From IMG/VR virus record IMGVR_UViG_3300033997_000478, positions 248,001 to 312,000 of that record: DNA of 64,000 bases; one strand, 5' to 3'. Below, piece after piece: positions 26,915 to 37,211 of the stretch (position 1 is the stretch's first letter; every line of letters starts with the position of its first letter). The notes under the pieces were generated by a model, which saw only the letters and a program-made list of their open reading frames with translations, made no database searches and was not told the DNA's origin. The translations under genes were made by a program, and so were the position numbers.

Positions 26915-27517
26915 ATGAGCGACTTTCATATCGACCGACGTTTCGATAAGCCGGGACATGAATCCCTCGTTGACTTGATCAACGACAGCAACAAGACGTA
27001 CATCAAGCCGGGGGAGATCGAAGGCGATCAGATCACTGCGGTCGAAGGTCTTCCATTGGGCTTGAATACGAGTGTGCGTATTCGCCTGAAAGGAGCAAAG
27101 GAAGGCGCCCCCTCATCCACGCTGTTTTACCGTCGACTGGACATCGGTAAGTATCTGGCCGATCGCGGTCCGTTCCCTTACGACCTCGAGCGTGAGGACA
27201 AGGACCAGCAAGAAATCCTTGATGCCATCAAGGCCCAGTACGGCGTGGAGCTGTCCCTCGAAGATGTTGGAATCATCTACAACTGGACCGATACGGCCCA
27301 GTACGTCATCTTGGTGATGTACTCGCGAAACCCGGTGTTCTACGGTGAGGTGCGTTTGCAAGGCAAGCCACCTTCGGACCTCAGTTGGGTGGTCGATGAG
27401 ATCATGCGTGACCTGACGCTGGCAGATGTCATGACCGGTACGGAAATCATTCCGGCCATTCAGGACGTCATCCCCAAGCAGATGCGCAAGCTCCGCATTA
27501 CTGACGTCAAGCTTTAA
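26915..27517 (+). CDS. gp131-family baseplate/tail protein (200 aa)
   Basis: LVDLINDSN...NTSVRI...TLFYRRLDI motif shared with the ORFs at 10533 and 10997. Confidence 0.6.
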   Translation: MSDFHIDRRFDKPGHESLVDLINDSNKTYIKPGEIEGDQITAVEGLPLGLNTSVRIRLKGAKEGAPSSTLFYRRLDIGKYLADRGPFPYDLEREDKDQQEILDAIKAQYGVELSLEDVGIIYNWTDTAQYVILVMYSRNPVFYGEVRLQGKPPSDLSWVVDEIMRDLTLADVMTGTEIIPAIQDVIPKQMRKLRITDVKL

Positions 27518-27518
27518 A

Positions 27519-27549
27519 CATAGCGGAGGTCTTCGGACCTCCGTTTATG
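27519..27549. terminator. CATAG..TTATG-flanked hairpin element
   Basis: CATAG-CGGAGGTC-TTCG-GACCTCCG-T-TTATG. Confidence 0.75.
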
Positions 27550-27617
27550 TCGCTTATACTGTGACTAGCCTGGCCTGACGGGCTTTGCTTAACCTCTTTA
27601 TCCACGGAGCACTCTCG

Positions 27618-28493
27618 ATGGCGACCACCACGCCGCGCGTTATCACCCGTACCATCAACGGCACGCGCATCCTCACCGCCCTGCAGCGCGGTAAGCCGTA
27701 CACCCACGTCCCGTACACCACGCTCAACGAGCTGCACGGCATCCAAGCCGGCGTGATGCCGGACAACGCCGAGACCCCGCGCGTGCAGTATTTCTGCATT
27801 GGCACGAATGGTCATGTGAACCGCACCGGCGCTGACGGTGGTCACTACACCTCTGCCCGCAAGCATGGGCCGGACGATTTCGGCCTGTACACCCAGATCC
27901 CGTTCCTGCTGCGCCGTCCCGGTGAAGACCTGACCCAGGACCAGCGTCAGAAGTACGCCCTGCGCAAGATCATCGAGATCAATGGCGAGAACTGGATCGC
28001 CTACTATCTGATGAAGATCCCGACTGACACCGAGCCGGTGCGCATGCTGCTCAACACGGTCAAGGACGGCGTCACCACCACCGAGCCGTTCATCCCGAAG
28101 GCTTCCAACCTGCAGCCGCAGCCGAAGGAACCGCCGGCCAATGGCGCCATCAGCACCAACGGCTCGTACTTGTCGGTGACCTCGATGACCGACATCGTGC
28201 TCAGCGCCCTGGACGTCACCGAACAGATCGAAGTTGCCAAGATCATCCACGGCAACCCCGAGCGCGCTCTGATCTCCGAGATCGGCCTGGTGGCCGCTTC
28301 GCCGAAGATCGTCACCTTCACCGATCCGGGCGGCGGCAACGTCCAGATGGAAGAAGCGGTCATGGCGCAGATCACCACCCACATCACCGGCCTGTGGCCT
28401 GTGGCCTTCGCCACCGAAGGTTTCCGTTTCGGTCTGGATCTGGGCGGCACCGAGCCGCTGATCGGTCTGGACACCACCAACACCACCCCCTAA
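27618..28493 (+). CDS. Virion structural/baseplate protein (phiKZ gp139-like), 291 aa
   Basis: GGAG RBS. TTLNE...YFCIG.NGH...PFLLR...YYL..I motifs recalled for this family. Confidence 0.6.
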   Translation: MATTTPRVITRTINGTRILTALQRGKPYTHVPYTTLNELHGIQAGVMPDNAETPRVQYFCIGTNGHVNRTGADGGHYTSARKHGPDDFGLYTQIPFLLRRPGEDLTQDQRQKYALRKIIEINGENWIAYYLMKIPTDTEPVRMLLNTVKDGVTTTEPFIPKASNLQPQPKEPPANGAISTNGSYLSVTSMTDIVLSALDVTEQIEVAKIIHGNPERALISEIGLVAASPKIVTFTDPGGGNVQMEEAVMAQITTHITGLWPVAFATEGFRFGLDLGGTEPLIGLDTTNTTP

Positions 28494-28505
28494 GCGAACA
28501 CCCCC

Positions 28506-29120
28506 ATGAACACACGTCAAGAACAAGATGTAACCTTGCGTGTGGCAGGCATCGATCCAGGTACGACGACTCTCGGGTTGTCGTTTCTGGACCTGAACCT
28601 TTCCAACGGCCGCTGCGTCATCGCCTATTCCAAGACGGCAGACGGCGGCAAGTTGGGTAAGGACTATCGTCTGGAAGCTGAAACACATGGCGACCGTTTC
28701 GCACGCTTGACCGCCATTGAGGATTTCCTGTTCGTCGTCTTTGAGATGATGCAGCCTCATGCGTTCTGCACTGAATCTCCCTTCCTGCGCAAGTTCCCAG
28801 CGACCTTCGCAGCACTGACCGAGTGTGTCAGCCATTGCCGCCGCGCGGTGCATCGTTACGATCGCCACGCACGCATGGATACGGTGGACCCGCCCACAGC
28901 CAAGCTCGGTGTGGGCATGACCATCAAGAAGGGTGCAACGAAAGACGATGTAAAGGCTGCAATCTTGCGCCTTGTGGACTCCAAGCTTCCCAACGGCCTT
29001 CCGGCCTTGGAAGTGGCCCCAGATGTGAATCTCGCCGAGTTGGACGAACATGAGATCGACTCGATCGCAGTGGCCTACCACCTAGTGCAACAGCTCCGCA
29101 AACAAATCCCCGGCCTTTAA
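28506..29120 (+). CDS. ruvC: RuvC-like Holliday junction resolvase
   Basis: VAGIDPG (catalytic D), CTESPF (catalytic E), P.TAK..VG...TKDDV, and HEIDSIAVA. Confidence 0.85.
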   Translation: MNTRQEQDVTLRVAGIDPGTTTLGLSFLDLNLSNGRCVIAYSKTADGGKLGKDYRLEAETHGDRFARLTAIEDFLFVVFEMMQPHAFCTESPFLRKFPATFAALTECVSHCRRAVHRYDRHARMDTVDPPTAKLGVGMTIKKGATKDDVKAAILRLVDSKLPNGLPALEVAPDVNLAELDEHEIDSIAVAYHLVQQLRKQIPGL

Positions 29121-29671: not shown

Positions 29672-30292
29672 TCAGTTCGCTGCCAGTGCGGCGGCAGCAT
29701 CAGCACGCTTGCGCTTGTCCAGTGCCACGGTGACCTGCCGCAAGATCGCGGTGGGTTCCCGGTAGGTGCCGGCTTGACGCATGTACTCCGTCTCGATCTG
29801 ACGCTTCTGGATCAGACGAGCCATGTTGGTCTTGCCGCCAAAGATCGACCAGGCACGCACTGCACCGTACATCAGCGAGCGAGTGAACCAGTTCACGCCT
29901 GCAGCTTTCATGGCCTCCAGGAAGATGGCATCGGCCTCTTTACGAGTGATGGTCACCGGGATTTCATTGTGGAACAGGGTCTTGGTTTCGCACAGGATGT
30001 CATGCAGCGTTGCAGCCTGTCCGTAGGCGCCCCACGGCGGCACCAGCCACCACAGCGGACGCGGTACGGAGGCACCATCGGTGAGGAAGCCGGCGGGCAC
30101 GTAGCCCCACGTGGAGCGATCCTCAGCACTGCGGTAGAAGCGGAAGGACGTGATGACACGGTAGTAGTCCTTACGCAGTACCTTCGATGCGTACTCGTCG
30201 TATTCGATGGCCAGCTTGGCATCGAAGTTGGTAAAGGGAATGGCCTCCGCGATCTGGGTGGCCGTGGGAACATAGGGATTGTTGATGTCCAT
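29672..30292 (-). CDS. DUF1353-family protein
   Basis: VPAGFLTDGASVPRPLW...AATLHD...RKEADAIFLEAM...MYGAVR signature. Confidence 0.8.
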   Translation of the reverse strand: MDINNPYVPTATQIAEAIPFTNFDAKLAIEYDEYASKVLRKDYYRVITSFRFYRSAEDRSTWGYVPAGFLTDGASVPRPLWWLVPPWGAYGQAATLHDILCETKTLFHNEIPVTITRKEADAIFLEAMKAAGVNWFTRSLMYGAVRAWSIFGGKTNMARLIQKRQIETEYMRQAGTYREPTAILRQVTVALDKRKRADAAAALAAN

Positions 30293-30318
30293 TAGTCACC
30301 GCAGGGGCTAAATAAGAA

Positions 30319-30340
30319 CCGGGGAGGTTTCCCTCCCCGG
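30319..30340 (-). terminator. Intrinsic terminator after the Hint-domain gene
   Basis: On the minus strand CCGGGGAGG-GAAA-CCTCCCCGG followed by TTCTTATTT. Confidence 0.7.
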
Positions 30341-30347
30341 CACGGTC

Positions 30348-31679
30348 TTACATGATCTGCTTGACTTCAGAGGCGTTGTGCGTAGCGATACGACGATCGC
30401 CTTGCTCGCCTGCGAAGTAGGACTGGTCGTTCACATTGAAGAGCACCACATCCTTAACACCGACGTATTGCACTTCACGCACGCGTTCCCAGCGCAGCTC
30501 ACCGCGGTCGTTGACGAAGACTTCCTCACCATACATCTGCGGGCCGAACATGCTACACGAACCATCGCGCATGGTCATCGGCGTCGAGTTGGAAGCAACG
30601 ATGCTGATGCCCGATTCGGTGACGATACGGAAGCACGGTTGCGGCATGACCTTGTTGGCACGGACCTGACGCAGCGTCATGATGTCCGGATTGTAGGCCG
30701 AGCCATCAATCCAGTCGCCGATGGCGATCTCATGAGCCTGACGCTCAGTATCCATCCACATGTCAGTGGCCACACAACCACCACCGCCACCACCGCCTCC
30801 GCCACCACCCGAACCGCCGCCGGTGTTACCACCTTCGGGGACGATGATGTCCAGGTCGTTGAAGCTGTTGGTGAGGTTGTAGTAGAAGCGGAACTGGTTA
30901 ACGACGTTACCGTTGCGCTTGATCGTGACCAAGAACCAGCCGCGATTGAAAACTCGCAGCACCGAGTTGGGATCTCGGTAAGCGTAGTTGTTGGCCTGCG
31001 TGGTCATGTCCAACAGCAGCAGCAGCTCACGGTTCTGGTTCAACGGCATGTCCACACCTTCACCGGTGATGACAACGGTGGAGTTGTTGAACGCACCGGG
31101 CACGCCCGGCTGCCATTGCCACGTGTTGGGATTGGCCGGCATCGGAATCCACCAACGACCACGGTCCAGACTTTGCAGCTGGTAGGAGATCGTGTAGGTG
31201 TCGCCGAAATCAGGGCGCGGACTCTGCGCCCAGTTGCCATTGCTGATCACACGACCATCCGGATACAAGTAGCCGATCTGACCTTGGCCAGCTCGAACCA
31301 CCAGTGCTCGGTAGTTGCGCGTCATCTGCCAGATGTCCCACGTCCCGTCACGACGGAACGTCAGCCTCAGCTGGTTGGTGTTGTGCGCCACGTGCCAGAT
31401 CACCGAAGGGCAATCGGACATGGGCATGTCCATGTAGCCGATGTCACCCATCGGATTGGTGTAGCCCACCGAACCACGTGCTGCCCAGTAGTTGGACACG
31501 TCCGGACCATCGGGGTGGTAGAACCCGGCGTCCTGGGCTCGAGAGCCCAGGCTGATCGGTGCATAGCGCAGCGGGTTACCGGCCACGTCGTAGTAACCGG
31601 GAATCACTACACCGCCGGAGTCAGGTTCGAACAGGTCATTGAAGCTGGGACCGTTGGGAGCGAAGAATTGGTCACCCAT
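30348..31679 (-). CDS. Fibre-tip adhesin-like protein (443 aa) with a Gly linker and a C-terminal Hint (intein-like) domain
   Basis: Start moved to ATG 31679 (GAGGAG RBS overlapping the fibre stop). N-terminal FNDLFEP...RYAP...G.....DVSNYWAARG anchor, a poly-Gly linker, then C-V-A-T-D ... T-H-N spanning 134 aa. Confidence 0.75.
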   Translation of the reverse strand: MGDQFFAPNGPSFNDLFEPDSGGVVIPGYYDVAGNPLRYAPISLGSRAQDAGFYHPDGPDVSNYWAARGSVGYTNPMGDIGYMDMPMSDCPSVIWHVAHNTNQLRLTFRRDGTWDIWQMTRNYRALVVRAGQGQIGYLYPDGRVISNGNWAQSPRPDFGDTYTISYQLQSLDRGRWWIPMPANPNTWQWQPGVPGAFNNSTVVITGEGVDMPLNQNRELLLLLDMTTQANNYAYRDPNSVLRVFNRGWFLVTIKRNGNVVNQFRFYYNLTNSFNDLDIIVPEGGNTGGGSGGGGGGGGGGGCVATDMWMDTERQAHEIAIGDWIDGSAYNPDIMTLRQVRANKVMPQPCFRIVTESGISIVASNSTPMTMRDGSCSMFGPQMYGEEVFVNDRGELRWERVREVQYVGVKDVVLFNVNDQSYFAGEQGDRRIATHNASEVKQIM

Positions 31680-31689
31680 GGTGTTCTCC

Positions 31690-33789
31690 TCACTTACCCA
31701 GGCGGGCCAGAACCTGCGCGAGCTGCGACTCCAGATTGGCGATACGCAGTTCCTGCGACTGCACGACAGTGCGCAGCAGGGCGACCTCTTCCAGTGCTTG
31801 GTCAGCCGCTTCACCGGCAGCGAATGCCGATTCCATGGCCAGACCAGCGGTGTTGATCGCCAGACGCTTGGTCTTCTTGCCCGGCTCGGTGAACTCGCTG
31901 ACGTAATCGGCAGCCACCTCGTTGAGCTCCTGCGCAATCACGCCGCGCTGATGCTCATCGTTGCGCTTGAGGTTCCACTGCTTCCACTTCAGCAGGCGCC
32001 ACAGGGCACGCGCTTGAGCCGACTTGATGTTCTTCTTCAGTCGACGATCGGATGGCTGGAAACCACCGCCGGCGTAGATACGACCGTTGGAGGCAGTGAA
32101 GTTACCGTCGTTGCCGAAGGTGAACCACTTGTAGTTGTTGGACGGACCGGTACGCAGGCCCAGACCATTGCCACCGTCGTACAGGTAGTAAGCCCAGCCG
32201 CCGAGGGTGATCGAGTTCACGCGCGCATCGGAGTTGATCACGATGCGGTTGTTGATCTGGTTCTGCAGCGGGTTGATGGCAATCACCTGCACCAGCTGCC
32301 GACCGCGCATCGGAGTCAGATAACGGTCGTTGGCGTTACCACCTTCCGCTTCACCTTGAGTGGCGATCGGATAGTTCTCCACCGAACCCAGACCGACCTG
32401 TGCTTTGGTCGTAGCGTGCGGGTTGCTGCTGTTGTTCATGTGGTTGGTCAGTGCCGCACCAATGCCGTTGGTGATCTGCTGCGCAGTGCGCAGCGGCGTC
32501 ATGAACGTGGCGTTGTCAGTCGCACCCTGCGCCTGAGCCTGGGTGGCGGTCGGGTAATTGTCAACATTACCCAAGCCGACCTGAGCCTTGGTCACCTGGT
32601 GGGGGTTGCTGATGTTGGCGATGTGGGCCTGCAGAGCATTGCCCGCCACTGCATCAATCAGGGACCGACCACCTTGCGGAGTCAGGAACAGGTTGTTGGC
32701 CGTACCGGCCGTGGCTTCAGGAACCGTAGCGGTCTTGAAGTTGTCCACGTTACCCAAACCGACTTGCGCCTTGGTGGTGGCGTGCGGGTTGTTGGTATTG
32801 CCGATGTGCGCGTTGAGCGGATTGACCGCTTGGGCGGTGATTGCCGCTGCGGTCAGCACGGCCGACATGTAACCATCGCCCGTGCCCTGCTGGGCTTGGG
32901 TGGTGGTGGCCATCGGGTTGTTCACCACGCTACCCAGACCCACCTGTGCCTTGGTGACACCGTGGGGGTTGTTGGTGTTGTTGATGTGCGCAGTCAGGGC
33001 GTTGCCCACCAATACCTGGATCTGCTGACGACCGCGCAGCGGGGTCATGTACAGGTTGTTGGCGTTGCCGTCTTCGGCTTCGGCCTGCGTGGCAATGCGG
33101 TAGTTCTCGACCAGACCCAAACCGACCTGGGCCTTGGTGACCGCATGCGGGTTGTTCTTGTCGTTGATGTGCTCTTGGAAGTTGGCCTGCAGCTGATTGA
33201 TCAGCGCACGCAGCACGGCATCTTGAAGATCCACGTACTGACGCATCTCATCAAACGCTGCCTGGTCACCCAGCAGAATCGCACGACGCACCTGCTCGAC
33301 AGCGGCCACGAGGTATTCGAAACCGAACACGTCGCCGATGTCGTGCAAGTGGGCGGCCGGCGGGAAGTACTCCGGCACATCGATCAGGTCACCCCAGTGA
33401 ACCTTGCGGTTGTCCAGGTCCAGACCGTCCAGCAGCTGCTGGATGACGGTAGCCGACAGGCTGTAGACGTCACCCACCGCGTGGTAGGAGAACTTCAGGT
33501 CCAGACCACCACGGTAGGTATCGGGAATGAAGATGACCGAGCAGACTTCCTGGCCAGATTGCAGCGAGGGCTTGGGCACCATGTGCACCGGCTTGTAGTC
33601 CACGTCCGGAACCAGTTCACGGCCAGACGTAGCATCCACCAGTACCATGTTGCGGGTGTAGAAGGCACCGCGCGAGGGGACGAACGCGCGGTTGCCGGCG
33701 GCTGCGATACGTACCGGTTCGTCCCCGACGAAATTCGTCGGGGCTTCACCAGTCAGATCGAGCGGGAGTTGAAGAACGGGGGGATTCAT
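31690..33789 (-). CDS. Tail fibre protein C (699 aa): 5 His-repeats and a C-terminal S74 chaperone
   Basis: H.....NPH..TKAQVGLG.V.N repeats, SDRRLKK motif, and GVIAQEL. Confidence 0.85.
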   Translation of the reverse strand: MNPPVLQLPLDLTGEAPTNFVGDEPVRIAAAGNRAFVPSRGAFYTRNMVLVDATSGRELVPDVDYKPVHMVPKPSLQSGQEVCSVIFIPDTYRGGLDLKFSYHAVGDVYSLSATVIQQLLDGLDLDNRKVHWGDLIDVPEYFPPAAHLHDIGDVFGFEYLVAAVEQVRRAILLGDQAAFDEMRQYVDLQDAVLRALINQLQANFQEHINDKNNPHAVTKAQVGLGLVENYRIATQAEAEDGNANNLYMTPLRGRQQIQVLVGNALTAHINNTNNPHGVTKAQVGLGSVVNNPMATTTQAQQGTGDGYMSAVLTAAAITAQAVNPLNAHIGNTNNPHATTKAQVGLGNVDNFKTATVPEATAGTANNLFLTPQGGRSLIDAVAGNALQAHIANISNPHQVTKAQVGLGNVDNYPTATQAQAQGATDNATFMTPLRTAQQITNGIGAALTNHMNNSSNPHATTKAQVGLGSVENYPIATQGEAEGGNANDRYLTPMRGRQLVQVIAINPLQNQINNRIVINSDARVNSITLGGWAYYLYDGGNGLGLRTGPSNNYKWFTFGNDGNFTASNGRIYAGGGFQPSDRRLKKNIKSAQARALWRLLKWKQWNLKRNDEHQRGVIAQELNEVAADYVSEFTEPGKKTKRLAINTAGLAMESAFAAGEAADQALEEVALLRTVVQSQELRIANLESQLAQVLARLGK

Positions 33790-33822
33790 GGCCCGTAGTG
33801 CTCCTGTTGCTGTCTGAATTGA

Positions 33823-36800
33823 TTACGGAGTCATGAACGTCGTATTGCTGCGAGTGTAGGCTTCCACCAACACCGGACGCAGACGCGCGTTGCGCTGCGA
33901 CTGATAGAGGATGCCGTTGTAATCGCTGAAATACAGCCGTCCCGGACGTGCCGCGGGATGGTTGATACCCAGATAGGCGTATTCCCACGCCGTGCCGTTG
34001 TAGGTGTAGTAGCGCTGCTTGTCCTTGTCGCCGGTGGCGCCGATACGGATGTAATCCTTGTACTGGCGCGGACGGGAGACGACCTTGAACGAGACGTTGG
34101 GCTGACGCAGGGAGATCAGACCCCACTGCGACGGCGCGTCCACGAACATCGACAGCGTCGGCGTGTCGGCCAGATCGATCACGATCTGTTCGGAAGCCAC
34201 GTAGGCGGTGGCGCCGTACTGACTGGTATCGATCGTCAGGATGTTGCCTGCGCGCTTGACGCGGATTCGGGTTGCGCCATTGGTGGACCAACCCTTACCG
34301 GCCTCGATGAAGTCAGCCGGCGGACGGGTGTCTTGCACCTGACCGTCGCCCCACTTGAGCAGGCCGTTCTTACCAGCGATCTTACGACCGTCGTTCTGCA
34401 GCGGGTTGAGAACCACCGAGAGCAGGGTGTAGACTTCGCCACCGGGCTGATCGCTGATCTTGTTCATGCCGCCGGGCGTGCGGATCACCGCCAGCGTGTA
34501 CTGACGACCACCGGAGACGACCGAGGCTGCAATGACACCTGCGCCCTTGGCCGCATCGAAGTTGGAGGAAACATCCACTTCGAAGGTGTAGTTCAGCGAA
34601 GCTTCCGGGGACAGCAGTGCGCCAGTGTTGGGCACCGTGGTGGTCTCCAACTGAATGGCACCTGCGGTGTCGTCCCACACCCAGTCATCGAGGATCTGCT
34701 GATCGGCGTAGTAGTTCTGGTTACCCGCGGCCGAAGACGGCAGCCACTGCGGGTAATCGTCCTTGACCGAATTGGACAGACCACGAATGGTGAGTTCGTC
34801 AGCATCGGTGGTTGCCACCGGCACCTGCTCTACGAGCGAACCGACGATCTGGTTGCGGTTGGCCGAACCGGGGAAGTCACCGAAGTTGACATCGCCGAAG
34901 GTTGCACGCGGATTGGCGTACGGCGGCAGCACACGCGACAGGTAGACAATACCAGCCGGCTCAGCGTTGGTGACCGAATTGGTGTTGACGTAGAACTGAT
35001 TGGACGCGTTCTGCGACAGGACCGTAGCGGTTGCCGCTTGGCGCGGGCCGTTGGTGCGCATGTACAGCGTCAGTTCCTTGCCATTGGTCACGTCGGTGTA
35101 GACGTAACCGAACACCACGTTGGCGTTGGACTCTTCCTCCATCAGCGTCACCGAGGAGCGGCCCATGGCGCGCGGACTCAGACGAATCAGGTAGGTGCTC
35201 GAAGCCAGGCGGGCGTAATCGTCGCCGCCGGTCACGTAAGCCACGATGTCCGGAACCGGATTGGCCAGCAGGTTGGACGGAATGACCGTCGAGCCCAACT
35301 TGGTCCAGCTGTTGCCAACCGAACTGGTGTTGGCCGGGTAGGTCACCATCGGAGCGAGGGCTTCCATCACCTGGGCGTAGGTCTGACCTGCGAACTTGGT
35401 CGAGTCAGCCGCCACACCGGTCTTGTCCAACTTCGCGTTCAGCTTGTTGTCGGTGGTGGCCTTGTCGTAGGCACCCACCTGCTCAGCGGTCACTTGGTGC
35501 GGGTTGTTGCGCGCGCCGGTGTGCTGGGTCAGGGAGACGCCGATCGTTGCATCGATCAGGGCCTTGCCGGTCAGCGGAGTCAGCCACACGTTGTTGAGCG
35601 TTCCGCCCTGCGCCTCGATCGAGGTGGCCGTCTTGAAGTTGTCGACGTTACCCAGACCCACCTGTTCCTTGTTGACCTGGTGGGGATTGTTCAGATCGGC
35701 CAAGTGAGCAGCCAGCTCCGGTCCGGAGCTGCCACCACCGTTGTTGGCGACATACAGCGCCACACCACGCGGGGTCATCAGCAGGTTGTTGGCCGTACCG
35801 GCCAGAGCCTGCATGTCATCGGCCGCCGCAAAGTTCGGGACGTTAGCCAGACCTACTTGGGCCTTGGTCGTACCATGCGGGTTGGACGAATCGTTGATGT
35901 GGTTGGTGATCGTCGGCTGGAACAGGGCAGCCACCATCTGGCGACCACGCAGCACAGTCAGCAGCTTGTTGTTGACGTTGCCTTCCTCGGCTTCAGCCTG
36001 CGTGGCCGGACCGAAGTTGGGCACCTGATCCAAACCCACCTGGGCCTTGGTGGTGTTGTGCGGGTTGTTGGTGTCGTTGACGTGACTGGTGATCGGCGCC
36101 AAGGCGATCGCATCGATTGCGGCCTTGGTGGTCAGCGGGGTCATCACTACGTCGTCGGCAACACCCAACTGAGCAGCCACCGTATCGGCCTTGCCGAAGT
36201 TCTGCACATTGCCCAGGCCCACTTGGGCCTTGGTCACGGCATGGGGGTTGTTCTTGTTGTTGATGTGGGTGTTCAGCGGCGCCACAGCGAAGATGTCAAC
36301 CAACTGCTTACCACGCAACACCGTCAGGAAACGGTTGGTGGCCGTGCCGGCTTCAGCTTCGGCCTGCGTCGCGGTGGGGTTGTTCTCAACGTTGCTCAGC
36401 CCCACCTGCGCCTTGGTGGTGTTGTGGGGATTGTTGCTATCGTTGATGTGCTGATCCATCCGATTGCCGTACAGCGCCTGCATCATCTGAGCGCCACGCA
36501 GGACGGTCAGGTAATGGGAGTTGCTGACGCCGGCTTGCGCGGTGGCAATATCGGCGACCGGGTAGTTCTGCACGTTGCCCAAGCCGACCTGGCTCTTGGT
36601 GACTTGGTGCGGGTTGTTCTTGTCGTTGATGTGATTGGTCAGGCCTTCCGAGCCCGAAGCCAAGATCGCATCACGAATGCCGTTCAGCGCCGCTTCCAGT
36701 TCCTTGGCACCGACCATGTCATCCAGATGCCACTCGTGGTCGATGACCGGGAAGGCGATCGGCAGATTGACGATCTGTTCCCAGTTGACGCGACGCGGGT

Positions 36801-37182
36801 TGAGCAGCTTGTTGGACAGGATCTCCAGGATCTTCTCGGCACTGATCGTCCACACACCGCCCAGGGTCTGGTAGTTGTACTCGATCGCACCTTGCAGGGT
36901 CTGATCGTAGAACACGAACGAACCGTAGATGCGATCTGCACACGCCAGCGAGGCGTCGTGGAAGTAGTGGCCCGGCGCCCAGTCCTGACCTTGGATCAGT
37001 TCTCGACGGGAGGGCAGCAGGTACATCTTCACCGAGTCAGCGAAGTACGGGGCCGCCGCCGGAAGAACGAAGTGGTACTGACCCAACTCAGGCGGTGCGA
37101 TCGGCTGACGCTCGGCCGTGATCTTGTTGGTAGCGGCCTTACCCGTCGGGTCAAACGGGTAGGCAACTTGAGGGTTGCTCAT
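33823..37182 (-). CDS. Tail fibre protein D (1119 aa): 7 His-repeats plus C-terminal globular domains
   Basis: GGAG RBS. N-terminal YPFDPTG..ATNKI..E motif related to the N-terminus of fibre C, and NPH.TK.QVGL repeats. Confidence 0.85.
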   Translation of the reverse strand: MSNPQVAYPFDPTGKAATNKITAERQPIAPPELGQYHFVLPAAAPYFADSVKMYLLPSRRELIQGQDWAPGHYFHDASLACADRIYGSFVFYDQTLQGAIEYNYQTLGGVWTISAEKILEILSNKLLNPRRVNWEQIVNLPIAFPVIDHEWHLDDMVGAKELEAALNGIRDAILASGSEGLTNHINDKNNPHQVTKSQVGLGNVQNYPVADIATAQAGVSNSHYLTVLRGAQMMQALYGNRMDQHINDSNNPHNTTKAQVGLSNVENNPTATQAEAEAGTATNRFLTVLRGKQLVDIFAVAPLNTHINNKNNPHAVTKAQVGLGNVQNFGKADTVAAQLGVADDVVMTPLTTKAAIDAIALAPITSHVNDTNNPHNTTKAQVGLDQVPNFGPATQAEAEEGNVNNKLLTVLRGRQMVAALFQPTITNHINDSSNPHGTTKAQVGLANVPNFAAADDMQALAGTANNLLMTPRGVALYVANNGGGSSGPELAAHLADLNNPHQVNKEQVGLGNVDNFKTATSIEAQGGTLNNVWLTPLTGKALIDATIGVSLTQHTGARNNPHQVTAEQVGAYDKATTDNKLNAKLDKTGVAADSTKFAGQTYAQVMEALAPMVTYPANTSSVGNSWTKLGSTVIPSNLLANPVPDIVAYVTGGDDYARLASSTYLIRLSPRAMGRSSVTLMEEESNANVVFGYVYTDVTNGKELTLYMRTNGPRQAATATVLSQNASNQFYVNTNSVTNAEPAGIVYLSRVLPPYANPRATFGDVNFGDFPGSANRNQIVGSLVEQVPVATTDADELTIRGLSNSVKDDYPQWLPSSAAGNQNYYADQQILDDWVWDDTAGAIQLETTTVPNTGALLSPEASLNYTFEVDVSSNFDAAKGAGVIAASVVSGGRQYTLAVIRTPGGMNKISDQPGGEVYTLLSVVLNPLQNDGRKIAGKNGLLKWGDGQVQDTRPPADFIEAGKGWSTNGATRIRVKRAGNILTIDTSQYGATAYVASEQIVIDLADTPTLSMFVDAPSQWGLISLRQPNVSFKVVSRPRQYKDYIRIGATGDKDKQRYYTYNGTAWEYAYLGINHPAARPGRLYFSDYNGILYQSQRNARLRPVLVEAYTRSNTTFMTP

Positions 37183-37211
37183 TGTTGAAATTCTCCAGCG
37201 AGGACGCCATC

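What the first reader, a model, noticed from the sequence alone, without database searches (positions are those of the whole stretch)
30348..31679. Fibre-tip adhesin ending in an atypical Hint (intein-like) domain
Seen: the gene is translationally adjacent to fibre C. It has a fibre-anchor-like N-terminus, an aromatic-rich beta domain, a poly-Gly linker, a 134-aa domain (30375-30776) starting with Cys and ending His-Asn, and only 8 further residues (ASEVKQIM). The +1 residue is Ala, so there is no splicing nucleophile, and block B reads SNSTP instead of TxxH. Known: Hint domains (inteins, Hedgehog, BILs) self-cleave via Cys1 thioester formation and Asn cyclisation, and Hedgehog transfers its N-domain to an external nucleophile. 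Inference: not a splicing intein, but a self-processing module on a receptor-binding protein. It could be a removable folding chaperone, a maturation timer, or a reactive thioester that covalently links the adhesin to the fibre or a host-surface molecule.
Basis: partly seen in the sequence, partly recalled or inferred. Interest (0 to 1): 0.8.

Follow-up and report, generated by a model that had tools for sequence, protein, structure and literature searches.

The report
Intein-like cap on phage tail-fibre protein
A tail-fibre-associated protein of a 324-kb Xanthomonas-type jumbo phage ends in a genuine but stripped-down intein/Hedgehog-type (Hint) domain, one of a large, unstudied family that caps the C-termini of phage host-recognition proteins and most likely cuts itself off.

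Summary
The gene (30348-31679, minus strand, 443 aa) follows a 699-aa fibre gene by 10 nt. It encodes a conserved N-terminus, an all-beta domain, an 18-residue Gly linker, a 134-aa domain from Cys302 to His434-Asn435, and an 8-residue tail. AlphaFold2 (pLDDT 91) plus structure searches show a Hint fold: Hedgehog Z 17.9, inteins Z 15-18, and all 50 top Foldseek hits are Hint domains. Cys302 aligns with intein residue 1 and Asn435 with the last intein residue. Pfam and NCBIfam have no model for it. An exhaustive search found 650 clusters, almost always at the extreme C-terminus of tail fibre, tail tip or host-specificity proteins. Cys1 and the final His are invariant and Asn is 96-97% conserved. 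The +1 residue is never Cys, and the block-B His is replaced by Thr. Within the neighbouring fibre's own family, the module is an alternative ending to the self-cleaving Peptidase_S74 chaperone and never co-occurs with it. A natural Hint-less orthologue stops exactly at the linker. Best reading: a type-A-BIL-like self-cleaving C-terminal cassette removed during fibre maturation. Cleavage itself is inferred, not shown.

The parts
30348..31679 (-). Whole gene, 443 aa plus stop: a tail-fibre-associated protein ending in a Hint module
   Evidence: Syntenic homologues in Xanthomonas phages RTH11 and LucasX are annotated 'hypothetical'.
31455..31679 (-). Conserved N-terminal region, aa 1-75; putative attachment to the fibre (inferred)
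   Evidence: Most invariant columns of alignment A4 lie here. phrog_11610 matches residues 10-122.
30831..31454 (-). Variable all-beta domain, aa 76-283, rich in aromatic residues; putative receptor-binding part
   Evidence: AF2 all-beta, pLDDT mostly 70-90. Only weak matches to Ig/PapD-like folds and pilus tip adhesins, Z <= 5.8. Residues 1-274 match an AFDB 'Phage tail protein', E 1.5e-8.
30777..30830 (-). Gly-rich linker, aa 284-301 (15 of 18 Gly; 11 consecutive Gly before Cys302), encoded by a GGN repeat
   Evidence: pLDDT is about 28. Gly-rich linkers precede Cys1 in most family members.
30375..30776 (-). Hint (Hedgehog/intein) domain, Cys302-Asn435, 134 aa
   Evidence: AF2 pLDDT 91.3. 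All 50 top Foldseek PDB hits are Hint domains. VIA-align Z 17.9 to Hedgehog 1at0 and 17.8 to the NpuDnaB intein, over model residues 302-435/436.
30774..30776 (-). Cys302 codon (TGT): Hint residue 1, predicted thioester nucleophile; Gly301|Cys302 is the predicted cleavage site
   Evidence: Cys in 162 of 162 and 91 of 91 modules. It aligns with residue 1 of inteins.
30579..30593 (-). Block B equivalent, S363-N-S-T366-P367: SxxTP in place of TxxH
   Evidence: HMMER alignment to the KlbA intein. S363 98%, T366 92%, P367 100%.
30375..30380 (-). His434-Asn435: block G penultimate His and terminal Asn, the predicted succinimide-forming residue
   Evidence: His 100%, Asn 96-97%. Asn435 aligns with the last intein residue.
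30351..30374 (-). Eight-residue C-terminal tail ASEVKQIM; +1 is Ala
   Evidence: Family tails are 4-7 aa in most members, rich in Lys and often ending in Pro; +1 is never Cys.
30318..30341 (-). Terminator-like G+C hairpin with T run immediately after the stop codon
   Evidence: A Rho-independent terminator is annotated at the same place in LucasX.
31690..33789 (-). Upstream 699-aa tail fibre with a C-terminal Peptidase_S74 intramolecular chaperone (context)
   Evidence: PF13884, E 3.2e-11, residues 580-630. phrog_2163/13857.
29672..30292 (-). Downstream DUF1353 / phrog_1158 'tail assembly chaperone', 206 aa (context)
   Evidence: Conserved in synteny in RTH11, LucasX and L006.

Best explanation
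The last 142 residues form a type-A-BIL-like Hint autoprocessing cassette fused through a floppy Gly linker to the C-terminus of a tail-fibre-associated protein.

Proposed chemistry (inferred). Cys302 attacks the Gly301 carbonyl in an N-to-S acyl shift. The resulting thioester is resolved by water or a small thiol. This releases the mature protein (residues 1-301, ending in poly-Gly) from the free Hint domain. His434-Asn435 can cyclise and cut off the 8-residue tail. With no +1 nucleophile and almost no C-extein, the outcome is cleavage rather than splicing.

Proposed biology (inferred). It would be functionally parallel to the Peptidase_S74 intramolecular chaperone on the neighbouring fibre, but with unrelated fold and chemistry. 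It is exchanged as a cassette among unrelated phage host-recognition proteins.

Status of each step. Shown: the fold, the motif conservation, the C-terminal position, the tail-fibre context and the cassette shuffling. Inferred: cleavage, its timing and its purpose.
For: Fold. AF2 pLDDT 91.3, pTM 0.87. All 50 top Foldseek PDB hits are BIL, intein or Hedgehog Hint domains. VIA-align gives Z 17.9 at rmsd 1.8 A, with Cys302 on intein residue 1 and Asn435 on the last residue. A profile search of PDB sequences gives weak hits that are mostly inteins.

Catalytic signature. Among modules averaging 39% identity, Cys1 and the penultimate His are 100% conserved and the terminal Asn 96-97%.

Type-A BIL features. 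His-Asn end and no +1 nucleophile, a class for which cleavage products dominate (review PMC4031507).

Position. The module sits at the extreme C-terminus in nearly all of about 165 modules, with a 4-7-aa tail in most.

Carriers. Every functionally named PHROG hit listed is a tail fibre, tail or virion structural protein. The informative Pfam hits are phage tail and adhesion-type domains.

S74 parallel. Of 120 homologues of the window's 699-aa fibre, 49 end in S74, 3 end in this Hint and none has both. None of 168 Hint carriers has S74.

Dispensability. A natural orthologue, P0005 (282 aa), ends exactly where the Gly linker starts, in an otherwise syntenic locus.

Not the specificity-determining tip. 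The Hint part is more conserved than the N-domain (96 vs 65%, 76 vs 48%, 51 vs 28%), and 59-73%-identical Hints sit on unrelated N-domains.
Against: No experiment or proteomic datum shows cleavage. The XacN1 virion proteomics could not be read for ORF231.

The usual helpers of the N-terminal step are missing family-wide. Block-B His is Thr. Block F position 4 is Lys/Leu/His rather than Asp. Block F position 13 is Gln/Arg/Asn rather than His. The N-S shift may therefore be slow, conditional or absent.

The Hint domain is monomeric in known cases, so a trimerisation-chaperone role like that of S74 is not obvious. A separate chaperone gene (DUF1353) already lies downstream.

Why a perfectly conserved His-Asn would be kept just to release a 4-8-residue peptide is unexplained.
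Confidence: 0.55

Rival explanations
1. Thioester-driven ligation rather than simple cleavage. The Gly301 thioester is resolved by an amine. The amine could be the alpha-amine of the released tail (type-A BIL splicing without a nucleophilic side chain, leaving the adhesin carrying the tail). It could be a Lys of a virion partner such as the fibre. It could be an amine on the host surface, giving a covalent bond.
For: Type-A BILs ligate their flanks by attack of the freed amino group on the N-terminal thioester (PMC4031507). The closest solved folds include the C. thermocellum BIL (2lwy) and the Tetrahymena BUBL BIL2 domain. The fully conserved His-Asn and a short tail of conserved length, rich in Lys, suggest the C-terminal reaction matters. 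The long Gly linker would give reach.
Against: The +1 residue is Pro in 26 of about 160 modules; a secondary amine is a poor ligation partner (my inference). The tail sequence is not conserved apart from Lys/Pro enrichment. A Hint-less orthologue exists in the same locus, so no obligatory covalent link is needed. A thioester precursor would have to survive on free virions for host-surface attack.
Confidence: 0.2
2. Catalytically inert Hint fold kept in the virion as a structural or binding domain at the distal end of the fibre protein.
For: The family lacks block-B His, block-F Asp and block-F His. Its conserved surface motifs (STPMT, W-E, YFAG) could be a binding face.
Against: Invariance of exactly the first residue (Cys) and the penultimate His, with a 96-97% conserved terminal Asn, is not expected for a purely structural role. 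The second common Cys (C349) is Cys in only 70% of members, so a disulfide cannot explain Cys1. The domain is more conserved than the upstream variable domain and is shuffled between unrelated fibres. That is the opposite of what a host-contacting tip would show. A Hint-less orthologue exists.
Confidence: 0.15
3. Remnant of a polymorphic-toxin-type PT-HINT releasing peptidase whose C-terminal payload has been lost.
For: The nearest ESM Atlas fold neighbours are PT-HINT clusters. HINT peptidases and tail-fibre repeats are listed together for several polymorphic toxin families (PMC3482391). A few family members carry 60-160 residues, or a second Hint, after the Asn.
Against: About 155 of 161 modules have tails of only 3-11 residues, with a sharp mode at 4-6. 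That indicates a selected architecture rather than decay. No Pfam PT-HINT hit appears among the 25 families listed for 91 members, even at E <= 1. The carriers sit in phage structural modules.
Confidence: 0.05

Closest known systems
Type-A bacterial intein-like (BIL) domains (e.g. Clostridium thermocellum BIL, PDB 2lwy)
   Same: Hint fold: best Foldseek hit, TM 0.72/0.77, and Z 14.4. Cys1 is present, the domain ends in His-Asn, there is no +1 nucleophile and no homing endonuclease. It sits in variable surface or secreted proteins. For this class cleavage products dominate (PMC4031507).
   Different: Block-B His is replaced by Thr, and block-F Asp and His are absent. The 'C-extein' is only 4-8 residues, so there is nothing substantial to ligate. 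The carriers are phage tail fibres. No Pfam or NCBIfam Hint model detects it.
Hedgehog/Hog C-terminal autoprocessing domain (PDB 1at0)
   Same: Highest structural score: Z 17.9, rmsd 1.8 A over 128 residues. The Hint domain lies C-terminal to the functional domain. A Cys1 thioester releases the N-terminal product by attack of an external nucleophile (my knowledge of the family).
   Different: Hedgehog keeps TxxH, lacks the terminal His-Asn, and has a sterol-recognition extension that brings in cholesterol (my knowledge). None of that is present here.
Peptidase_S74 intramolecular chaperone of phage tail fibres and endosialidases (PF13884)
   Same: Same position (extreme C-terminus) on the same fibre family. 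It is interchangeable with the Hint module and never co-occurs with it. It is present on the adjacent fibre gene in this window. It removes itself after assembly (my knowledge of the family).
   Different: Unrelated fold and chemistry: a Ser-Lys dyad in a trimeric helical domain. This is an analogy of role, not homology.
PT-HINT (PF07591) releasing peptidases of polymorphic toxins
   Same: Closest ESM Atlas fold neighbours, TM 0.73-0.80. A Hint domain near the C-terminus of long filamentous proteins, some with tail-fibre repeats (PMC3482391).
   Different: PT-HINT precedes a toxin domain that it releases. Here only a 4-8-residue tail follows. No sequence-level match was found.
Canonical class 1 mini-inteins (NpuDnaB, gp41-1, Mtu RecA)
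   Same: Fold Z 16-18, with N- and C-terminal residues in register. Cys1 and His-Asn are present. The YFAG motif of block F aligns with the intein block F.
   Different: There is no +1 Cys/Ser/Thr, the domain is not inserted in a host protein, and there is no block-B His. It cannot perform the four-step splicing pathway.

Membership tests
Hint (Hedgehog/intein) superfamily | The Hint beta-fold | tested here: met
   AF2 pLDDT 91.3. All top-50 Foldseek PDB hits are Hint domains. Z up to 17.9.
Hint (Hedgehog/intein) superfamily | N-terminal Cys/Ser nucleophile at residue 1 of the fold | tested here: met
   Cys302 aligns to intein residue 1. Cys is 100% conserved.
Hint (Hedgehog/intein) superfamily | Autoprocessing activity (ester or thioester formation at the N-terminal junction) | not testable with these tools
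   Needs protein expression and mass spectrometry.
Canonical (class 1) intein | Cys, Ser or Thr at +1 of the C-extein | tested here: not met
   +1 is Ala here. In the family it is A/I/P/V/S/T/Q/K, never Cys and not conserved.
Canonical (class 1) intein | Insertion within a host protein, with functional exteins on both sides | tested here: not met
   Only 8 residues follow Asn435. The family mode is 4-6 residues.
Canonical (class 1) intein | Block B Thr-x-x-His | tested here: not met
   The block reads S363-x-x-T366-P367, with His replaced by Thr.
Type-A BIL domain | C-terminal His-Asn, as in intein block G | tested here: met
   His434-Asn435; His 100% and Asn 96-97% in the family. Definition from PMC4031507.
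Type-A BIL domain | No +1 nucleophile | tested here: met
Type-A BIL domain | Sequence membership in the described BIL-A clade | tested here: inconclusive
   No Pfam or NCBIfam Hint model hits. Structural scores do not separate BIL from inteins or Hedgehog. No BIL-A sequence alignment was available for a profile-profile test.
Hedgehog-type autoprocessing domain | Sterol-recognition region after the Hint core, and no terminal His-Asn | tested here: not met
   The domain ends His-Asn plus 8 residues and has no extension.
Peptidase_S74 intramolecular chaperone | Match to PF13884 and a Ser-Lys dyad | tested here: not met
   No Pfam hit for this protein. None of 168 Hint carriers has S74. The similarity is in role only.
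PT-HINT (polymorphic toxin) module | A toxin domain C-terminal to the Hint | tested here: not met
   An 8-residue tail here. Only about 5 of 165 family modules have 23 or more residues after the Asn.
Phage tail fibre / receptor-binding protein | Location in the tail-fibre gene module, with homology to tail proteins | tested here: met
   The gene lies between the S74 fibre and the DUF1353 'tail assembly chaperone'. Synteny holds in RTH11, LucasX and L006. The N-domain matches an AFDB 'Phage tail protein'.
Phage tail fibre / receptor-binding protein | Presence in the virion and binding to the host | not testable with these tools
   No proteomic record was found for this protein or its homologues.

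The most novel reading that the evidence does not exclude
The module is a latent thioester 'warhead'. Loss of the block-B His keeps the precursor stable on the virion. On a trigger such as receptor contact, the Gly301 thioester forms and is captured by an amine of a virion partner or of the host envelope. The phage adhesin is then covalently and irreversibly tied to its target. This would be an intein-chemistry counterpart of the thioester adhesins of Gram-positive pili.
Probability: 0.08. Interest if true: 0.9.

Novelty: new variant of a known kind. Interest (0 to 1): 0.62.

Why it matters
Self-cleaving C-terminal chaperones of the S74 type are a textbook feature of phage fibres and tailspikes. 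This finding points to a second, chemically unrelated self-processing cassette, based on intein/Hedgehog chemistry, that occupies the same position.

The family is large: 650 clusters at 50% identity. It occurs in jumbo, T4-like and Mu-like myoviruses, in a roughly 44-kb podovirus-like contig, and on lambda-J-like tail tip proteins. Pfam and NCBIfam have no model for it, and I found no paper on it.

If the module is active, three things follow:
- It would explain how many 'hypothetical' fibre proteins mature.
- It would change how receptor-binding proteins should be expressed and engineered. The construct boundary would be the Gly linker.
- It would offer a naturally minimal Hint domain that lacks the usual block-B His, for mechanistic study and for C-terminal thioester generation in protein chemistry.

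Tried and rejected
Pfam and NCBIfam. Scans of the whole protein, of the isolated domain at E <= 10, and of 91 and 70 family members found no Hint family among the families listed.

PDB by sequence. A profile search gave only weak intein hits, E 0.2-2. They are suggestive but not sufficient, so I relied on structure prediction.

Literature. Searches on Hint or intein-like domains together with tail fibres found only terminase, RNR and DnaB inteins and polymorphic-toxin HINT. One search was uninformative and one search was a syntax error.

Virion proteomics. The LucasX paper has no mass spectrometry. The XacN1 proteomics are in a figure; the supplement only lists ORF231 as hypothetical.

Bacterial genomes. 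Two pattern scans of 185,579 species genomes found no close relative. This is a weak negative, because pattern search only reaches close relatives.

N-domain fold. The ESM Atlas feature search gave scores of at most 0.63, below the level that means anything. Structure matches are Z <= 5.8. I do not claim a specific adhesin fold.

Active-site geometry. Model coordinates are not exposed to scripts, so I could not measure distances around Cys302.

Rejected readings. A splicing intein is rejected: there is no +1 nucleophile and no real C-extein. The longer TTG-started 529-aa ORF is rejected: the homologues define the ATG at 31679.
Full report
**What is at the coordinates**

The gene runs on the minus strand from the ATG at 31679 to the TAA at 30348-30350 and encodes 443 aa. 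A GAGGAG ribosome-binding site precedes the ATG. The stop codon of the upstream 699-aa fibre gene (31690-33789) lies 10 nt before it. A strong hairpin with a T run follows the stop at 30318-30341. LucasX has an annotated terminator at the same place. The longer TTG-initiated ORF listed mechanically is not the gene, because all homologues begin at the same Met.

The window is bases 248001-312000 of a complete 324,428-bp virus record with direct terminal repeats. Its nearest cultured relatives are the Xanthomonas jumbo myoviruses RTH11 (71.6% nucleotide identity over this gene) and LucasX. In both, the same four genes occur in the same order: a fibre of about 1120 aa, a fibre of about 700 aa, this protein, and a DUF1353 'tail assembly chaperone'. 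Our protein's homologue is annotated 'hypothetical' in both.

**Anatomy of the protein**

- Residues 1-75 are the best-conserved part of the N-terminal half. Residues 10-122 hit phrog_11610, of unknown function.
- Residues 76-283 are variable, aromatic-rich (13.8% W+Y+F across residues 1-283) and predicted all-beta.
- Residues 284-301 are a linker with 15 Gly in 18 positions and 11 Gly in a row. It is encoded by a GGN repeat and modelled as disordered, with pLDDT about 28.
- Eight further residues, ASEVKQIM, follow.

Every sequence statement in the finding is correct.

**Is it a Hint domain?**

Sequence libraries say nothing. Pfam and NCBIfam give no hit for the protein, for the isolated domain at E <= 10, or for 91 relatives scanned one by one. 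A profile of 91 relatives searched against PDB sequences gave only marginal hits (E 0.2-2), but six of the ten were inteins.

Structure prediction settles it. AlphaFold2 on the 91-sequence alignment gave pLDDT 91.3 and pTM 0.87. All 50 best Foldseek matches in the PDB are Hint domains, led by the Clostridium thermocellum bacterial intein-like domain 2lwy (TM 0.72/0.77). They also include mini-inteins, the Tetrahymena BUBL BIL2 domain and Hedgehog. The Swiss-Prot AlphaFold library returned VMA and DnaB inteins, Hedgehog, Warthog and qua-1.

An independent aligner run on the full-length model gave these scores:

| Target | Z |
|---|---|
| Hedgehog 1at0 (rmsd 1.8 A over 128 residues) | 17.9 |
| NpuDnaB intein | 17.8 |
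| gp41-1 intein | 17.6 |
| BUBL BIL2 | 15.1 |
| Cth BIL (2lwy) | 14.4 |

In these alignments the model range starts at residue 302 against intein residue 1 and ends at 435 against the last intein residue. Cys302 and Asn435 therefore occupy the two catalytic end positions of the fold.

**A large, unannotated family**

An exhaustive phmmer search of 1.84 billion cluster representatives with the 142-aa C-terminal piece found 650 proteins at E <= 0.001 and 172 at E <= 1e-10. Their lengths in the listed set run from 102 to 3013 aa.

- In about 165 full-length modules the domain lies at the very C-terminus. The median distance from the end is 0 residues beyond the profile envelope.
- The tail after His-Asn is 4-7 residues in most of 161 cases.
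- Over 160 modules, Cys1 is 100% conserved, Val2 94%, the penultimate His 100% and the terminal Asn 96%. Thr precedes the His in 84%.
- The +1 residue is A, I, P, V, S, T, Q or K, and never Cys.
- The tail is enriched in Lys and often ends in Pro.
- A Gly-rich linker precedes Cys1 in most members. Trp is at -1 in 23%.
- A few proteins carry two modules in tandem (P0029, P0139, P0167) or a 60-160-residue extension.

**The catalytic set is stripped down**

The HMMER alignment to the KlbA intein places S363 and T366 on the Thr and His of block B (TxxH). It also aligns the family's V-x-D-Q-x-Y-F-A-G with intein block F. In the family table:
- S363 is 98% conserved, T366 92% and P367 100%.
- The position matching block F:4 is Lys, Leu or His rather than Asp.
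- The position matching F:13 is Gln, Arg or Asn rather than His.
- No column other than the penultimate one has a conserved His.

The review PMC4031507 names Thr B:7, His B:10, His G:6, F:4 and F:13 as the known assisting residues. This family therefore keeps both end nucleophiles (Cys1, Asn) and the penultimate His. It lacks the usual helpers of the first step. A second Cys (C349) is present in 70% of members and is Ser in 22%. Its role is unknown.

**What carries the module**

- Of ten long carriers scanned, seven belong to the same fibre family as the two fibres of this window (phrog_2163/13857). Some have PKD repeats. One further carrier (P0019) matches tail-protein PHROGs 376 and 20269.
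- Among 70 further carriers, every functionally named PHROG match listed was tail fiber, central tail fiber J, tail protein, tail protein and host specificity, or virion structural protein.
- Pfam added Phage_Tail_Tip, Phage-tail_3, Gp53-like_C, Mtd_N, PB4_spike, fn3, Big_9, cadherin-like and collagen domains.
- Genomic context confirms this. One carrier lies between head and internal-virion genes of a 44.5-kb contig with T7_gp14 and Bbp16 hits, which looks like a podovirus (my inference). Another lies just after a Mu-like baseplate. In Stenotrophomonas phage DLP_6 the carrier is the 1824-aa protein next to the baseplate wedge.
- Among 50,697 cultured phage genomes, tblastn finds the module in only nine: seven Xanthomonas phages, one recorded as an Erwinia phage, and DLP_6. 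All that I translated keep Gly-linker-Cys-Val ... (T/S)-His-Asn plus a 5-8-residue tail.
- This genome has exactly one copy.
- An ESM Atlas cluster of viral GpJ-like proteins is also a fold neighbour, and 20% of its members hit Pfam Hint. Some BFVD entries from uncultured phages are automatically named 'Hint domain containing'. Databases therefore brush against the phenomenon. I found no paper describing it.

**Evidence on function**

1. Positional equivalence with the S74 chaperone. The 699-aa fibre next door ends in Peptidase_S74. I collected 120 homologues of its N-terminal 260 residues. Of these, 49 end in an S74-like domain, 3 end in this Hint module, none has both, and 68 have other ends. 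None of 168 Hint carriers has S74.
2. Dispensability. P0005 is a 282-aa orthologue of our protein's N-domain (42% identical). It stops exactly before the Gly linker. Its locus has the same order, fibre-fibre-P0005-DUF1353, with only 95 bp before the next gene.
3. Conservation pattern. The table gives percent identity to the window protein.

| Homologue | N-domain | Hint |
|---|---|---|
| P0002 | 65 | 96 |
| P0003 | 48 | 76 |
| P0004 | 28 | 51 |
| P0011, P0015 | 33-34 | 27-28 |

Proteins with unrelated N-terminal parts (P0006-P0010, P0027, P0028) carry Hints that are 59-73% identical to this one.

The module thus behaves as a conserved cassette that recombines at the linker. It does not behave as a fast-evolving receptor-contacting tip.

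**Most likely mechanism**

By definition this is closest to a type-A BIL. It has a Hint fold, Cys1, a C-terminal His-Asn and no +1 nucleophile, and for that class cleavage products dominate over splicing (PMC4031507).

I propose the following steps, all inferred:
- An N-S acyl shift at Gly301-Cys302.
- Hydrolysis or thiolysis of the thioester, which frees residues 1-301.
- Asn435 cyclisation, which removes the 8-mer.

The biological role would be a transient C-terminal cap during folding or assembly of the fibre protein, analogous to S74.

The main weaknesses are these:
- The block-B His and block-F Asp are absent.
- There is no obvious reason to conserve His-Asn merely to shed a short peptide.
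- There is no experimental evidence at all.

I put 0.55 on this reading.

**Rivals**

- Amine capture of the thioester (0.2): tail ligation as in BIL-A, or a link to a Lys of a partner or of the host. This would give the His-Asn and the Lys-rich tail a purpose. Against it stand the 16% of modules with Pro at +1 and the Hint-less orthologue.
- An inert, retained domain (0.15). This fits the missing helper residues. It does not fit the invariance of Cys1 and the final His, or the conservation pattern.
- A decayed PT-HINT toxin module (0.05). The sharply conserved tail length contradicts it.

**The N-terminal half**

With only eight sequences the model is moderate (mean pLDDT 75). The N-domain is all-beta. 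It matches an AlphaFold DB 'Phage tail protein' (E 1.5e-8, residues 1-274). Beyond that it matches only Ig/PapD-like sandwiches and pilus tip adhesins at Z <= 5.8, which is within noise. 'Adhesin' therefore rests on gene context and on the pattern of a conserved N-terminus with a variable body. It does not rest on a fold match.

**Verdict**

The fold claim is confirmed. 'Not a splicing intein' is confirmed. 'Self-processing module on a receptor-binding protein' is the best-supported inference but is untested.

This is a new variant of a known kind: a terminal, C-extein-less, block-B-His-less Hint cassette specialised for phage host-recognition proteins. It is widespread and absent from the Pfam and NCBIfam domain libraries.

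Noticed in passing
window 31690-33789 (-) and 33823-37182 (-): Two paralogous fibres share the phrog_2163/13857 N-terminus and 'NNPH..TKAQVGLGNV' repeats. Only the 699-aa one ends in Peptidase_S74. The 1119-aa one has a long C-terminal region with no Pfam match.
   Followed up: partly
P0029 (1263-1407, 1403-1560), P0139, P0167: These proteins carry two Hint modules in tandem. The 5-7-residue tail of the first runs straight into Cys1 of the second (e.g. ...THNAIKGPGG|CVVVD). This implies serial self-cleavage or a module duplication.
   Followed up: partly
P0016 residues 440-653: There is a partial internal duplication of the first ~70 residues of the Hint module (CVASDSF...SIV repeated). It is either a real duplication or an assembly artefact.
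   Followed up: no
P0047, P0094, P0101 and two others: These rare variants lack the terminal Asn (ends ...THT...SHI...HHS...HHD). Some of them have 20-30 extra residues. They may be forms that only cleave at the N-terminal junction.
   Followed up: no
Family column equivalent to window residue C349 (30633-30635): A second Cys, 47 residues after Cys1, is Cys in 70% and Ser in 22% of modules. It could be a redox partner or a relay nucleophile for Cys1.
   Followed up: no
L012 (IMGVR_UViG_3300035670_000434, 43.7 kb): This contig has a 100% identical Hint module and the same ORF layout. It is evidently a fragment of the same phage from another metagenome record.
   Followed up: partly
window 30773-30818: The poly-Gly linker is encoded by an imperfect GGN/CCN trinucleotide array (12 copies). 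Such a site is prone to slippage and is a plausible recombination point for cassette exchange.
   Followed up: no
L006 5105-6988 (metagenome contig JAAIGE0100238546.1, GCA_011800935.1): In the locus with the Hint-less orthologue, the preceding 627-aa fibre has no recorded S74 hit either. That phage may lack both self-cleaving ends.
   Followed up: no
window 27507-29081 (-) and 31639-33798 (+), 33958-37188 (+): Very long antisense ORFs (524-1076 aa) overlap real genes. They are typical high-GC artefacts and not genes.
   Followed up: no
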